A program made the position numbers and the translations under genes. The notes beneath the pieces were generated by a model. That model ran no database searches. It worked only from the letters and a program-made list of their open reading frames with translations, and was not told the DNA's origin. A stretch of DNA of 63,927 nt, the filler included, from Hyphochytrium catenoides (Eukaryota > Protista > Hyphochytriomycota), in the NCBI GenBank assembly GCA_900088475.1. It is 10 parts of 10 records of this genome, joined end to end, with 100 filler letters (N's around TTAATTAATTAA, not from the genome) between each part and the next. Parts side by side here need not be neighbours in the genome. Positions count along the whole stretch, not along the records: positions 12,157 to 43,677 come from FLMG01004158.1; 9 more parts are not named here. One strand, 5' to 3'. Shown here piece by piece: positions 36,380-43,099 of this stretch (the stretch's first letter is position 1; each line of letters begins with the position of its first letter).

Positions 36380-38120
36380 CATGAGAACCAGACGGGTGAG
36401 CGCGTGAAGGAGATACGCTCCGATCGCGGGGAGAGTTAGTTAGCAGTGCTGCTGGCAGAGTGTGTTCTCGCCGGGGGATCCTGCACTCTCCTACATCTGC
36501 TTATTCCCTCTAGCAACGGATGCGGTGGACGCTGGATGAGGAATGAGGACTGTCATGCAGGCCACGAGATTCCTGTTGATTGCTACTGACCTGCCTCATT
36601 TTCTATGGGGAGATGCATTGGCCTCCGCAGTTCACGTGTTCAATCGCTGTCCTATTGCCTCACTCACTCGATGGCTCTACCCCTACGAAAAGTGGTACGG
36701 CAAGCCGCCTGATCTTGGTCACCTACGCGTCTTTGGTTCACTTGCGTACGCTTTAAAGCCGTCCACGATGCTGCGAAACCTTGATGCGCGGAGCTCTCGG
36801 TATATCTTTGTAGGTGTGACTCTGCACTACTCATGGGTATCGACTGTATGATCTTGTGACCAAGAGAATCTCTGTGCGGCGTGATGTGGTTATCGACGAG
36901 TCTGGGTCTGGGGCCTTTCTGTTAAAGCAGGCCAAAAGCCCACAACATCATGATTATTATTATGTCTCTTTGTTTCCCATTATAGGGAGCGAAGAAGCAA
37001 CTGCCGTTGAAGCAGGGCAACTAGGTGGTGAAGAGAGTGCAGCGAAACAAGCAGAAACAAAGAAATGCCTTCGTTTGACGCAGCCAGTCCAGAGGAGCCC
37101 ACCAATGACTTTCTGGGGCCGAAGCCAGAGAGCAGCGGTGCTGATGGGACGGAGACGAGCGAGCTTGGCGAAATGAAGATCATCCTGCAGCTTCTTCTCC
37201 CTCCTCTCGGATCACAATCACTTCTCCACTCGGGTGATCGTCGCGGGAGACTGCTACAAGAAGACTCTCTCTCTTTTCCAATAGGCCAGGCTAATCTTCT
37301 GCATGTCTCTGAACCGAACAGTCCGCGAGGCACTCTGTGGACCTCATGCCACAGAACGGCTAGCTGCCATTACGTCAGAGCTCACATCAATGCAGTCCCA
37401 TGAGGTTTAGGATCTAGTGTCTCCACCCCCAGGCGCTCATATTATCGACTCTCGTATTTAGGTCAAGTTGCATAGCGATGGCTCCGTGGACAAGCACAAA
37501 GGCACGTCTGGTCGCTCTTGGCAATCGACAGAAGCAAGGTATTGACTTTTTTAGCGGACTCTTTGCTCCAGTGATAGGGTATGATATTGCTCTTCTTTGC
37601 TCCAGTGATAGGTATGTATGCCTGCTCGTCTACGCACCACGTCGATACTAAGACCACCTTCCTGAACGGCAGCTTAGACGAGCAGGTATACATGCGGCGG
37701 CCACCCGGTTATGCAGCCCGCGGTGGACAAGAGGATCACGTCTGGAAGCTGACGAAGCCAATATATGGTCTCCGCCAGAACCCCAAGATGTGGAATGACA
37801 CGCTGCACCATTACCTTATTGAACAAGAAGGGTTCCAGGCGGCGTCTGTGACTTTGGAGTTTACGTCAATCGGCACTCTTCGAGACTTGCGACCTTGAAG
37901 TCATCGGCGTCTTCTTCGTTGATGACATGCTCCTCTTTGCTCCCACCACCGAGCAAACAGCAGGACAGCAGGTCTCAAGACCATGCTCTCTGCTCGTTTC
38001 TCCATCGCCGATTTGGGGAAGCTAGAGTACTACTTGGGCATTCAAATAAAGCGGGATAGAGCAGCTAGCTAGATTTGCCTTCGACAGTCCAAGTACATAA
38101 CAGAGATCTTGGAGCCTTCA
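36380..38120 (+). mobile_element. Decayed Ty1/Copia pol: integrase, SH3-like region, RT
   Basis: LPHFLWGDALASAVHVFNRCP, PYEKWYGKPPDLGHLRVFGS, RDVVIDE, HKARLVALGNRQKQGIDF, TFLNGSLDEQVYMRRPPGY, YGLRQNPKMWN, FVDDML. IN precedes RT, the Copia order. Confidence 0.93.
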
Positions 38121-38621
38121 ACCCACTTGATGCATATTCCAACCCTATCCCGGCGCTCCCAAAGACGTACCCGCCTAGAGCTTCTACTTTTCCTCCCTTT
38201 GACGCTTAGGCTTGTTGAGACTTGAGCATCTCCCAAAAGCAACAACAATCCGACAAGTGATAAAAAGGATCTGTAAGTCAAGACCGGCAACGCCTAGGAG
38301 GCGCAAACGGCTTCAGCTACAGTCCTTTTTTTAATGGGTGAATTAAAGCTGATTAAAAGTTGGATAAAAGTACACAAAAGGTAGGGACGTCATCACGGCG
38401 AAGTTTAGGTAGATAAAAGCATTACGACAAGCGTAGGAGTTACGGCAGGAAACACGCAAGTAGGAACAGAATATTAGAATGAAGGTCAGGTCCTTGAGAG
38501 GATTGGACGTAGAAGCTCTTCAGTTGAACTGTGATTGACGCTGAAACCAAAAAGTGTACAGCGGACGACGCAGAGGGGAAGAACTCCTGGTATATAAACA
38601 AAAAACGGAGATTAGTCAAGA

Positions 38622-38702
38622 GTACGTTTGGTGTATGGTGCATACTGGTTAGGGTGTCGGCATCAAAGACAGAGGTCCTGGGTTCGAATCCCGGAGCGTA
38701 CA
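38622..38702 (+). ncRNA. tRNA-like RNA (tRNA-Pro(AGG)-like) in 5' LTR
   Basis: Acceptor GTACGTT/AGCGTAC + A73; A-box-like TGGTGTATGG; TTAGGGT loop; AGGTC; T arm CTGGG-TTCGAAT-CCCGG. Upstream TATATAAA (38591) and TTTT at 38707. Anticodon arm non-canonical. Confidence 0.8.
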
Positions 38703-38778
38703 AAACTTTTCTCCGGTATATCCAGACACCCCCTCCCATATTAATTAAGTGCTCACCATCCAATGATAAAATTTAACA

Positions 38779-38792
38779 TGGTGTACGCTCCG
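38779..38792 (+). promoter_or_regulatory. Primer-binding site TGGTGTACGCTCCG
   Basis: Directly abuts the LTR end CA. It is the reverse complement of CGGAGCGTACA (3' end of the LTR-borne tRNA-like RNA) plus CCA. Confidence 0.9.
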
Positions 38793-39007
38793 AGCGATAT
38801 AACTCGGGCAATATAGTGAGCCATTTGGTTCTGTGACCACGGATACGATGACCATCACAGTTCCATTTGAATCTAGAGCTTACAGAGGTCTCTAGATCCC
38901 GGGAGAGTGTTGACCTGTGATCGACGCTGAAACCAAAAAGTGTACAGCGGACGACGCAGAGGGGAAGAACCCCTGGTATATAAACAAAAAACGGAGATTA
39001 GTCAAGA

Positions 39008-39091
39008 GTACGTTTGGTGTATGGTGCATACTGGTTAGGGTGTCGTCGGCATCAAAGACAGAGGTCCTGGGTTCGAATCCCGGAGCGTACA
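39008..39091 (+). ncRNA. tRNA-like RNA, copy in 3' LTR
   Basis: Identical to 38622-38702 except for a GTC duplication 3' of the anticodon-like loop. Confidence 0.8.
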
Positions 39092-39180
39092 AAACTTTTC
39101 TCCGGTATATCCAGACACCCCCCCCATATTAATTTAAGTGCTCACCATCCAATGATAAAATTCAACACTTCAGTAGCTCA

Positions 39181-39825: not shown

Positions 39826-40747
39826 GCTGACGACCGGCTGGCTCGCACTCCTAATCGCCAAGCAGTTGGTCTTTGCTCTATGTCATGGTGTGCACGCGGC
39901 TTATTATCGCTTATGCAGTGCAAGCTGCGAGCCAAATTGTAACCGCCTTCCGCCATGTCCATTAGGAGGCTCTCGGACGTATCTTCACCTACCTGAAGGT
40001 AAGGCCACCCAAGGCTACTCCTTGTGTCTAGGAGGAGATGCTTTTATTCAACACTCGGTGCAGGCTGATGATGCTGATTCGGCTAGTGACCCAGTTGACC
40101 GAAAGTCTATCACAGGCTATTTATTTATTGAGCCTCAACGGCGGTGCTTTTGCGTGGAAGTCAAAGGAACAATCTCTCCGAGCGTCGTCAACGACGGAAG
40201 CGGAGTGCGTCTCTTTTTGGTCCGCAAGCCAGGTCGCAGAGCAATTCATCGTATTTCTGAGCGAGCTTGACTTCTCTAACCAGCTGCCCATTCCTATAAG
40301 CCAGGACAACAGGAGCGCGATTAATTAATTGTTCTCTGCTCCTCGTCGTCACGACCAAGTCAAAGGCACTCCAAGCACTGTGTCCTGCAAGAGAGGTCAG
40401 GTCGACAATGGGAGAATTAGTCTGGTCCATACTTCCTCCTCCGTAGCCCTGGTACCCGATTGCCTCACCAAGCCTTTACCCGCTAAAGTCTTTCAAACAC
40501 TGCGTCCTCACCTTGGAGTCCTCCTCCTAGTACCAGTACTGATACAGTACTCTTGGTACTACCCACCTACGGTTATCTGGGGAAAGAGAGTGAGTGAGAC
40601 AACAATTTGGTGAGTTAATTTGACCATCACCTGGTGATCCAGGGAAGCTAGGTATGATGGGGAGTCGAGTGCTACAATGCTCGTTGCCAGTAGTACAGTA
40701 GTCATTCTCTATGCACACTTAGTTCTCAGAGACATAGACGTTACAAG
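39826..40747 (+). mobile_element. Decayed Copia RT end/RNase H, 3' UTR and start of 3' LTR
   Basis: DADSASDPVDRKSITGY, GGAFAWKSKEQ..SSTTEAE, QDNRSAI, DCLTKPLP. Then GGGGAG and GAGTGCTACAATG (LTR start ~40664), cut at 40748 by another LTR. Confidence 0.88.
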
Positions 40748-42663: not shown

Positions 42664-43099
42664 TGTTGAGTGCTACAATGTTCGTTGTCAGTAGTACAGT
42701 AGTCACTCTCTATACACACCTAGCTCTCAGGGACATAGATATTACGGGTAGACCTGTGTTATGGAAAAGAGGGATGTGAGAAGAATTTCCAGAAGAACAC
42801 AGGAGCAGCACAATCTAGATGAAACGATAACAAAGGGACTGGGTATTGATCTATGATTGAGATTTCTCTGAATGATGACTCAGTCCAGAGCTTGGTCTGG
42901 ACTCGAGATCTTTTGCTCGGCCCCAGCTTCCCTCATCATCTCTCCTGTGCTGCTCCTGTGTTCTTCTGGAAATTCTTCTCACATCCCTCTTTCCCATAAC
43001 ACAGGTCTACCCGTAACGTCTATGTCCCTGAGAGCTGCTAGGTGTGTATAGAGAGAGTGACTACTGTACCACTGACAACGAACATTGTAGCACTCAACA
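42664..43099. repeat. Long inverted repeat of LTR sequence (arms 42664-42812 and 42946-43099)
   Basis: TGTTGAGTGCTACAATGTTCG...GAGCAGCACA and its near-perfect reverse complement, with a 133 bp spacer. Confidence 0.92.

What the first reader, a model, noticed from the sequence alone, without database searches (positions are those of the whole stretch)
38522..39167. Miniature LTR retrotransposon that appears to encode its own tRNA-like primer
Seen: two ~97% identical LTRs, a TSD CTTC(A), a PPT and no ORF. Each LTR holds a tRNA-like gene ending ...CCCGGAGCGTAC-A. The PBS directly after the 5' LTR, TGGTGTACGCTCCG, is the perfect 14-nt complement of that RNA's last 11 nt plus a CCA that is not encoded (the genome reads ...GTACAAAA). 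Known: LTR elements normally prime on host tRNAs. TRIMs with Pol III-derived LTR sequence exist (Cassandra with 5S; Helenus with tRNA-like), and Tf1 self-primes without tRNA. Inference: this element supplies a private primer matured by host RNase P/Z and the CCA-adding enzyme. I am not aware of this LTR-tRNA/PBS self-match being described, but could not check the literature.
Basis: partly seen in the sequence, partly recalled or inferred. Interest (0 to 1): 0.95.

Follow-up and report, generated by a model that had tools for sequence, protein, structure and literature searches.

The report
Mini retrotransposon with own tRNA-like primer
A 645-base non-coding LTR retrotransposon carries a tRNA-like gene in each repeat, and the end of that RNA plus an added CCA exactly matches the element's primer-binding site; no ordinary tRNA gene in this genome matches it, so the family probably supplies its own primer, which has not been described for LTR elements.

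Summary
Window 38523-39167 is a TRIM of the Helenus type. It has two LTRs (256 and 260 nt, 96.5% alike), a 5-bp TSD (CTTCA), a PBS, a short PPT and no gene, and it sits inside a decayed Copia element. Each LTR carries a degenerate tRNA-like Pol III unit. The 14-nt PBS is the exact complement of that unit's last 11 nt plus a CCA that the genome does not encode.

The family has about 100-170 LTR copies and about 38 internal regions in this 61-Mb genome. Five genome-wide pattern searches found no ordinary tRNA gene with this 3' end. All 26 exact PBS occurrences lie in this family.

The LTR ends before TGG, so the primer must end in CCA. That rules out a Tf1-type encoded self-primer.

The only paper on Helenus elements (Kojima 2024) looked for this LTR/PBS complementarity and found none.

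Some copies are cut exactly at the tRNA-like 3' end, two of them followed by CCA. This hints that the site is processed in vivo.

There are no RNA data and no covariation evidence. I put 0.6 on the element supplying its own primer. Whether the primer is a free small RNA or the genomic RNA's own 3' end is open.

The parts
38518..38522 (+). left target-site duplication, CTTCA
   Evidence: Read. The same five bases follow the 3' LTR.
38523..38778 (+). 5' LTR (256 nt). Proposed layout: U3 about 1-95, R from about 96-101 to 181-190, U5 to 256.
   Evidence: Repeat families D1/D2. 96.5% identical to the 3' LTR. About 174 candidate copies in the genome.
38591..38598 (+). TATA-like box about 30 nt upstream of the tRNA-like unit
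   Evidence: Read. Conserved in the alignment of 71 LTR copies.
38622..38702 (+). tRNA-like Pol III unit. It has a 7-bp acceptor stem (GTACGTT/AGCGTAC), an A-box-like segment at 38629-38640, a perfect B box at 38681-38691 and discriminator A at 38702.
   Evidence: ARAGORN; fold; alignment with host tRNA-Gln.
38707..38710 (+). T4 run, a weak Pol III terminator. Together with its twin in the 3' LTR it is the only T>=4 run on the sense strand.
   Evidence: Six host tRNA-Gln genes end in T5-T7.
38779..38792 (+). primer-binding site TGGTGTACGCTCCG, complementary to the tRNA-like 3' end plus CCA
38793..38900 (+). non-coding internal region with two short hairpin-forming inverted repeats
   Evidence: About 38 copies, all in this family.
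38901..38907 (+). short polypurine tract, GGGAGAG (GGGGGAG in most copies)
38908..39167 (+). 3' LTR (260 nt), starting TGTTGACC and ending ...TTCAACA
39008..39091 (+). tRNA-like unit of the 3' LTR. It has three extra bases in the central part, read as a 3-nt insertion (GTC).
   Evidence: ARAGORN.
39096..39099 (+). T4 run behind the 3' LTR tRNA-like unit; proposed 3' end region of the genomic RNA
39168..39172 (+). right target-site duplication, CTTCA

Best explanation
This is a non-autonomous Helenus-type TRIM, probably moved by a Ty1/copia element. The evidence for Copia is the TGTTG...AACA termini and the 5-bp TSDs. Its family primes reverse transcription with its own RNA instead of a host tRNA.

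Proposed mechanism (all steps inferred unless marked otherwise):
1. Each LTR holds a tRNA-derived Pol III unit. Its acceptor stem and T arm (the 'top half') are intact and its centre is degenerate.
2. Pol III transcribes the unit. At the weak T4 terminator, some transcripts stop and give a short precursor. Others read through and give the roughly 480-nt genomic RNA, which ends at the same unit in the 3' LTR.
3. Host tRNA 3'-end processing (RNase Z, then the CCA-adding enzyme) produces ...GGAGCGUACA-CCA.
4. These 14 nt pair perfectly with the PBS next to the 5' LTR, and the partner's reverse transcriptase extends them.

Any of the roughly 80 intact LTR units, including solo LTRs, could supply the primer in trans.

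Shown by sequence: the anatomy, the complementarity, the need for a non-encoded CCA, and the absence of a host tRNA gene with this end.

Inferred: transcription, processing and priming.

Of the 0.6 total, I put about 0.4 on a free small RNA and about 0.2 on the genomic RNA's own CCA-tailed 3' end.
For: 1. Complementarity. The 14-nt PBS equals the complement of the last 11 nt of the LTR tRNA-like unit plus CCA. The PBS is exact in 26 places, all in this family. It is exact in 21 of 31 internal-region copies.

2. No ordinary host tRNA gene. Four pattern searches were run over the whole assembly: T loop plus RGCGTACA; TCRA plus AGCGTACA; T loop plus CGTACA; and the acceptor pair GTACGYT...AGCGTACA. 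They hit only LTR copies, one divergent sister family, and chance matches at the control rate. The host tRNAs with the same T arm are tRNA-Gln, and their acceptor stem is unrelated.

3. The primer must end in CCA. Solo and paired LTRs end ...AACA next to 5-bp TSDs (AGAAG, CTAAA, GGTTG, CTTCA). TGG therefore lies outside the LTR and is covered by the primer. The LTR reads GTACAAAAC in 67 of about 105 copies.

4. Pol III signature. The B box is perfect and an A-box-like segment is shared with host tRNA-Gln. T>=4 runs on the sense strand occur only directly behind the unit, against eight A>=4 runs. Host tRNA-Gln genes use T5-T7.

5. Truncated copies. LTR copies are cut at or within a few bases of the tRNA-like 3' end (positions 180-188 of 256) in L009, L031, L063, L064, L032 and L020. 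About 1.8 would be expected by chance. L009 and L031 continue with CCA.

6. Extended PBS. The PBS in L027 reads as a 19-nt complement of the unit plus CCA.

7. Pairing energy. The PBS duplex is -29.4 kcal/mol against -6.7 for the acceptor stem.
Against: - There is no RNA evidence. No RNA run exists for the organism.
- The unit fails the Rfam tRNA model, and its fold is no more stable than shuffled sequence (z = -0.35).
- No compensatory PBS/acceptor changes were seen. PBS variants in decayed copies do not match their own LTRs.
- LTR pairs are 84-97% identical, so the family may no longer be active.
- The CCA in L031 can also be read as part of a 4-bp CCAT duplication or microhomology.
- The inverted structure in L063 lies on a 1-kb contig, and its junction was not confirmed by independent contigs.
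- The assembly is fragmented (4759 contigs) and some stretches read N.
- The conservation profile is biased, because the copies were collected by their 3' end.
Confidence: 0.6

Rival explanations
1. The primer is the 3' end of the TRIM's own genomic RNA, in cis or from a second copy, and not a free small RNA. The 3' LTR's tRNA-like unit is cut by RNase Z and CCA-tailed. That end then anneals to the PBS. This is a sub-variant of the best explanation, and its 0.2 is counted inside the 0.6.
For: All four copies that stop exactly at the tRNA-like 3' end begin at LTR base 1 and include U3 and the leader (L009, L031, L063, L064). That boundary is expected for an RNA or plus-strand piece delimited by the PPT/U3 border. 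A mature tRNA-like RNA trimmed by RNase P would not include U3.

L063 and L020 carry U3 and the tRNA-like unit, a 3-4 nt link, and then antisense U5 starting at the last LTR base. This is the layout of strong-stop DNA still joined to such a primer.
Against: - These are a handful of rearranged copies.
- L063 is unconfirmed.
- The link in L020 is AAAC, not CCA.
- L009 lies in a foldback element without a TSD, so it may be a cDNA captured at a break.
- None of these copies shows a productive cycle.
Confidence: 0.2
2. An ordinary host tRNA with the same 3' end is the primer. The LTR unit is simply a copy of that tRNA, and its gene is missing from, or masked in, this assembly.
For: The assembly has 4759 contigs, and some stretches are withheld or read N. 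The Rfam-based tRNA scan scored only 63 of 1710 candidates. tRNA-derived LTR inserts usually descend from host tRNAs or SINEs (PMC10886601).
Against: - Four exhaustive pattern searches, which do not depend on the scoring shortlist, found none.
- tRNA families are normally multicopy.
- The nearest host tRNA by T arm (tRNA-Gln) has a different acceptor stem.
- In the alignment, the LTR unit's 5' acceptor strand lies upstream of the tRNA-Gln-like body, which looks like a newly formed stem.
- A scan of 241 million metagenome records for the T arm plus this end gave one chance hit, in a bacterial coding sequence.
Confidence: 0.1
3. The complementarity is not used for priming. It may be a cis RNA structure in which the 3' acceptor strand pairs with the PBS across U5, serving packaging or strand transfer. 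Or it may be a relic in a dead family.
For: The encoded 11-nt match lies only 76 nt upstream of the PBS on the same RNA and would form a stable stem. LTR pairs are up to 16% diverged. Tf1-type elements in fungi use an intramolecular pairing with the PBS (my own knowledge).
Against: A cis stem explains 11 nt but not the TGG. TGG lies outside the LTR and matches only a CCA tail. A relic of a shared origin would still need a host tRNA with this end, and none exists in the assembly. No other primer candidate for this PBS exists in the genome.
Confidence: 0.12

Closest known systems
Helenus (TRIMs with a tRNA-derived sequence in the LTRs; 'TRIMp3'; Kojima 2024, PMC10886601)
   Same: It shares the short LTRs around a non-coding internal region with a PBS and PPT. 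It shares the tRNA-like unit with A and B boxes in each LTR. Its 645-bp length falls within the 311-1263 bp range. It has the 5-bp TSD of fungal Helenus, Copia-like termini and many solo LTRs.
   Different: Described Helenus PBSs match host tRNAs, either at the 3' end or at the anticodon loop. The paper states that no complementarity between the LTR tRNA-like sequence and the PBS was found. Here the match is perfect over 14 nt including the CCA, and no host tRNA fits. Diagnostic strings of this family are absent from the paper's sequence supplement.
Tf1/Tf2-type self-priming LTR retrotransposons of fungi
   Same: The element supplies its own primer sequence, complementary to a PBS next to the 5' LTR.
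   Different: Tf1 uses the first 11 encoded bases of its mRNA, freed by RNase H, with no CCA. Here the last three primer bases (CCA) are not encoded and the complementary stretch is the 3' end of a tRNA-like fold. The TSS was not determined.
Cassandra and Ajax (TRIMs with a 5S rRNA-derived Pol III promoter in the LTRs)
   Same: A Pol III small-RNA gene sits inside each LTR of a TRIM.
   Different: Those elements carry 5S-derived sequence, not tRNA-derived sequence. No Rfam 5S match occurs here. Their PBSs match host tRNAs.
tRNA-like 3'-end modules processed by tRNA enzymes (MALAT1 mascRNA, plant viral tRNA-like structures, the Mauriceville retroplasmid transcript)
   Same: A tRNA-like fold at or near an RNA's 3' end is cut and CCA-tailed by host enzymes. 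In the retroplasmid, the CCA end is where reverse transcription starts (my own knowledge).
   Different: None of these is an LTR element with a PBS. Here the CCA end would act as a primer on a separate PBS, not as the template start.

Membership tests
TRIM / Helenus (Kojima 2024) | Two short LTRs flanking a short non-coding internal region with a PBS and PPT; total length under about 1.3 kb | tested here: met
   LTRs of 256 and 260 nt, an internal region of 129 nt, 645 nt in all, with a PBS and a 7-nt PPT.
TRIM / Helenus (Kojima 2024) | A tRNA-derived sequence with conserved A and B boxes inside the LTR | tested here: met
   ARAGORN calls one in both LTRs and in 86 family copies. The B box GGTTCGAATCC is perfect. 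The A-box segment is shared with host tRNA-Gln.
TRIM / Helenus (Kojima 2024) | 5-bp TSD (fungal Helenus) and solo LTRs | tested here: met
   TSDs CTTCA, AGAAG, CTAAA and GGTTG. There are far more LTRs (about 174 candidates) than internal regions (about 38).
TRIM / Helenus (Kojima 2024) | PBS complementary to a host tRNA (3' end or anticodon loop), with no complementarity to the LTR's own tRNA-like sequence | tested here: not met
   No host tRNA gene matches. The PBS matches the LTR unit plus CCA. This is the point of difference.
TRIM / Helenus (Kojima 2024) | Sequence identity to a described Helenus family | tested here: not met
   Four diagnostic strings were searched in the supplement as held in text form. 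The three strings specific to this family are absent. The fourth, an 8-nt PBS prefix, occurs twice, in unrelated P. coronata internal regions. This is a new family as far as that text goes.
Genuine tRNA gene | Reaches the Rfam tRNA model; canonical anticodon arm with a 3-base anticodon | tested here: not met
   There is no RF00005 match even at E<=1. ARAGORN gives a 4-base anticodon or inconsistent types. The centre folds as one long hairpin.
Tf1-type self-priming | The primer is the encoded 5' end of the element's own transcript, and its duplex with the PBS abuts the LTR end | tested here: not met
   The encoded match covers PBS bases 4-14 only. TGG lies outside the LTR in copies with TSDs, so a CCA-ended primer is needed. 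The TSS itself could not be tested.
Cassandra / Ajax | 5S rRNA-derived sequence in the LTR | tested here: not met
   No 5S match in the Rfam scans.
Pol III-transcribed TRIM ('TRIMp3') | Transcripts start at the small-RNA promoter and are made by Pol III | not testable with these tools
   Only indirect signs exist: T>=4 runs are avoided on the sense strand except behind the unit. No RNA runs are available.

The most novel reading that the evidence does not exclude
This would be a fourth priming strategy for LTR retroelements, after the host tRNA 3' end, the host tRNA anticodon half, and the Tf1-type encoded 5' self-primer. The strategy is an element-encoded, Pol III-made tRNA-like RNA that host enzymes CCA-tail and that then primes the element's own reverse transcription. 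The same tRNA-like unit would also define the 3' end of the genomic RNA. Every solo LTR would then remain a working primer gene for the family.
Probability: 0.5. Interest if true: 0.85.

Novelty: new variant of a known kind. Interest (0 to 1): 0.78.

Why it matters
Primer choice is a defining and conserved step of retroelement replication. Every LTR element studied so far either borrows a host tRNA or, in the Tf1 group, folds back its own 5' end.

A family that makes its own CCA-tailed tRNA-like primer would be new in several ways:
- It would show that a parasite of a parasite (a TRIM that depends on Copia proteins) can free itself from the host tRNA pool.
- It would give a function to the puzzling tRNA-like inserts of Helenus elements beyond a Pol III promoter.
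- It would turn solo LTRs into trans-acting helper genes.

It also matters for annotation. About 100 tRNA-like units in this genome would be primer genes, not tRNA pseudogenes. The claim can be tested directly with tRNA sequencing.

Tried and rejected
- Host tRNA search. An Rfam tRNA scan of the genome scored only 63 of 1710 candidates, so it could not settle the question. I replaced it with exhaustive pattern searches.
- Apparent alternative PBS. TGGGCCCATAACC follows the LTR in L002, L018 and L033. It turned out to be the flank of solo LTRs inside another repeat, not a second PBS.
- Reading L009 as another LTR family primed by this tRNA-like RNA. I rejected this. The neighbouring sequence is one arm of a foldback/MITE-like element whose repeat continues past the junction in other copies.
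- Autonomous partner with the same PBS or internal region. None was found. All matches lie in the TRIM family.
- Covariation. PBS variants (CTCAG three times; CTTCG, GTGCG, TAGGC and others once each) do not match compensating changes in their own LTRs.
- Metagenome scans. There was no hit to the family, and one chance hit in a bacterial coding sequence.
- Sequencing runs. Only DNA runs were listed, none on record as RNA. Contigs laid on L063 were short unitigs that did not bridge the key junction.
- Organism identity. One protein search gave no named relative. The host is probably a fungus (Copia pieces, Helenus-type element, small shares in soil and rhizosphere runs), but this is an inference.
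- Conservation profile. It shows the tRNA-like part as the least variable, but it is biased by how the copies were collected. I do not use it as evidence. That script also printed a majority line of the LTR alignment as a by-product. It was used only to list the A and T runs of the LTR and is not reproduced here.

Full report
WHAT IS THERE

Window 38523-39167 holds two direct repeats, at 38523-38778 and 38908-39167. They are 96.5% identical in a global alignment. CTTCA flanks both sides. The LTR ends ...TTTAACA and is followed at once by TGGTGTACGCTCCG (38779-38792). A 129-nt non-coding internal region ends in the purine run GGGAGAG, just before the 3' LTR's TGTTGACC.

ARAGORN finds a tRNA-like gene in each LTR, at 38622-38702 and 39008-39091. 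The element sits inside a decayed Ty1/copia element. An integrase SH3-like piece and an RVT_2 piece lie upstream, and RNase H-like ORF pieces, judged by eye and without a Pfam match, lie downstream.

THE tRNA-LIKE UNIT

The unit has the following features:
- A 7-bp acceptor stem, GTACGTT/AGCGTAC, with one G-U pair.
- A D-like arm.
- A perfect T arm and B box.
- Discriminator A.
- A centre that is not a normal anticodon arm.

ARAGORN reports a 4-base anticodon or changing amino-acid types. Rfam's tRNA model is not reached even at E<=1. The fold is no more stable than shuffled sequence.

The unit's T arm is identical to that of host tRNA-Gln genes, and it shares their TGGTGTA A-box segment. The acceptor stems are unrelated. 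In the alignment the unit's 5' acceptor strand lies upstream of the tRNA-Gln-like body.

The unit therefore keeps exactly the 'top half' that RNase P, RNase Z and the CCA-adding enzyme are known to recognise. That last point is established knowledge and was not tested here.

THE FAMILY

The genome is 61 Mb in 4759 contigs. The unit's 3' end occurs about 86 times with at most one mismatch. A DNA search gives 174 LTR candidates. The internal region occurs about 38 times, always in this family.

Two subfamilies differ at the T-loop purine (TTCGAAT or TTCAAAT), which is a position where tRNAs allow either purine.

Intact copies have 5-bp TSDs: AGAAG, CTAAA, and GGTTG for a solo LTR. Their LTR pairs are 84-97% identical, so the family was active in the past and may not be active now. 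The TGTTG...AACA termini and the 5-bp TSDs point to a Copia-type integrase (inference, in line with PMC10886601).

IS THERE A HOST tRNA WITH THIS END?

I ran four pattern searches over the whole assembly:
- T loop, then seven free bases, then RGCGTACA.
- The acceptor pair GTACGYT...AGCGTACA.
- A looser T loop that also covers initiator-type loops.
- T loop, then nine free bases, then CGTACA.

Every hit is an LTR copy of this family, one divergent sister LTR (C3723), or a chance match at the rate of the reversed-pattern control.

I read the sequence upstream of the hits for the 84 copies in loci I had fetched. All but two carry the family's peculiar central sequence. The exceptions are the divergent C3723 unit and one copy interrupted by another element.

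I also searched for the PBS on both strands. That search would detect any gene encoding ...CGGAGCGTACACCA. It gives 26 exact hits, all inside the family.

Within the limits of a fragmented assembly, the only genomic source of an RNA that can pair with this PBS is the LTR unit after CCA addition.

WHY CCA, AND WHY NOT A Tf1-TYPE SELF-PRIMER?

Copies with clean TSDs show that the LTR ends at ...AACA. TGG is therefore not part of the LTR. Minus-strand DNA starts opposite the last LTR base, and the primer covers TGG.

The LTR reads GTACAAAAC behind the unit in 67 of about 105 copies, so the CCA is added after transcription. An encoded fold-back primer of the Tf1 kind would explain only 11 of the 14 nt and would place TGG inside the LTR.

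SIGNS OF Pol III USE

On the sense strand of the whole element, the only runs of four or more T lie directly behind the tRNA-like unit in each LTR. Both are T4. There are eight runs of four or more A. The six host tRNA-Gln genes I read end in T5-T7.

A T4 run would be a leaky stop. This fits a unit that yields both a short precursor and a read-through genomic RNA of about 480 nt, with R running roughly from the unit's start to its end. This is inference. It is the 'TRIMp3' idea of Kojima 2024, applied here.

TRUNCATED AND REARRANGED COPIES

Among roughly 50 partial LTR hits, six stop at LTR positions 180-188, which is at or just behind the unit's 3' end. About 1.8 would be expected by chance.
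- L009 (C1131) and L031 (C2516) belong to different subfamilies. Both run from LTR base 1 to the discriminator and then read CCA before unrelated sequence. L009 lies in a foldback element without a TSD and looks like a captured cDNA. In L031 the CCA can also be read as part of a CCAT duplication or microhomology.
- L063 (C3117) and L020 carry U3, then the unit, then a 3-4 nt link (ACA or AAAC), then antisense U5 starting at the last LTR base. This is the layout of strong-stop DNA still joined to its primer. L063 is a 1-kb contig, and its junction was not confirmed by other contigs.
- L064 joins the unit's end to a new LTR start.
- L027 has a PBS that reads as a 19-nt complement of the unit plus CCA.

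Taken together, these copies suggest that RNA or cDNA ends form at the unit's 3' end and that CCA-tailed forms exist. They all include U3, so they fit the genomic RNA's own 3' end better than a free mature small RNA. They are few and they are aberrant, so I treat them as hints.

WHAT IS KNOWN

TRIMs with tRNA-like LTR inserts are known as Helenus. They occur in rust fungi, some mushrooms, bivalves, wasps, fishes and one lycophyte (PMC10886601).

That paper assigns their PBSs to host tRNAs. [quoted passage not shown] Three strings specific to this family are absent from its sequence supplement. An 8-nt PBS prefix occurs there only in unrelated internal regions.

Full-text searches for self-priming, tRNA-like LTR primers and TRIMp3 found no description of such a match.

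VERDICT

The element is a new Helenus-type TRIM family. It differs from all described families in that its PBS matches its own LTR-encoded tRNA-like RNA plus CCA, and no host tRNA fits.

My probabilities are:
- 0.6 that the family supplies its own primer, split as about 0.4 for a free small RNA and about 0.2 for the genomic RNA's 3' end.
- 0.1 for a host tRNA missing from the assembly.
- About 0.12 for a non-priming role or a relic.

Still missing are RNA evidence, primer identification on strong-stop DNA, and covariation in related genomes.

Noticed in passing
window 36543-37898 and 39866-40328: The TRIM lies inside a decayed Ty1/copia element. An integrase SH3-like piece and an RVT_2 piece lie upstream. 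RNase H-like ORF pieces lie downstream; they are broken by stops, were judged by eye and have no Pfam match.
   Followed up: partly
window 42664-43099 (partial copy at 40664-40744): A foldback/MITE-like element of about 436 bp has terminal inverted repeats of about 160 nt starting TGTTGAGTGCTACAATG. The same family interrupts LTR copies elsewhere (L061, L070) and flanks the CCA-ended fragment in L009.
   Followed up: partly
L093-L096 (C444, C770, C1910, C3723): Four host tRNA-Gln(CUG) genes read CCA in the genome directly after the discriminator base, before a T5-T7 terminator. The two tRNA-Gln(UUG) genes do not. Encoded CCA is unusual for eukaryotic nuclear tRNA genes.
   Followed up: no
L058:893-987 and L104 (C3785:1326-1341): Two copies of a related element have a homologous U5 end and internal region but the PBS TGGTGTACGTTGCG. 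That PBS would still pair over 11 nt (one G-U pair) with the same CCA-tailed RNA. No tRNA-like unit was seen in what is left of their LTRs.
   Followed up: partly
L070:742-821, minus strand (C3723): A divergent sister LTR has its own tRNA-like unit. The T stem and centre differ, but the last 9 nt (AAGCGTACA) are nearly the same as in the main family. Its PBS is unknown because a foldback element interrupts the LTR.
   Followed up: partly
L006 (C948:784-1554): A tandem array, LTR-internal-LTR-internal-LTR, in which both PBSs carry the same variant, TGGTCTACGCTCCG.
   Followed up: no
L024 (C4311:9810-9823): A deletion derivative in which the tRNA-like unit's bases 8-14 (TGGTGTA) are fused to the identical first 7 bases of the PBS. 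With CCA added, the RNA's last 7 nt are also complementary to its own bases 8-14, and the predicted fold uses that pairing.
   Followed up: no
L008, L017, L072, L047 (several contigs): Another short repeat starts TGTTGGATTTGTATGGG and ends ...AAATCCAACA. It is often inserted into this family's LTRs, several times inside the tRNA-like unit.
   Followed up: no
L036 and L068: Two LTR copies are split by insertions of about 500-700 bp at the same spot (LTR position about 95), just upstream of the tRNA-like unit. This may be targeting upstream of a Pol III gene, or it may be chance.
   Followed up: no
whole genome G000: The Rfam tRNA model's first pass gave 1710 candidates in a 61-Mb genome, and only 63 were scored. 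The genome may hold more tRNA-derived repeat families than the one studied.
   Followed up: no
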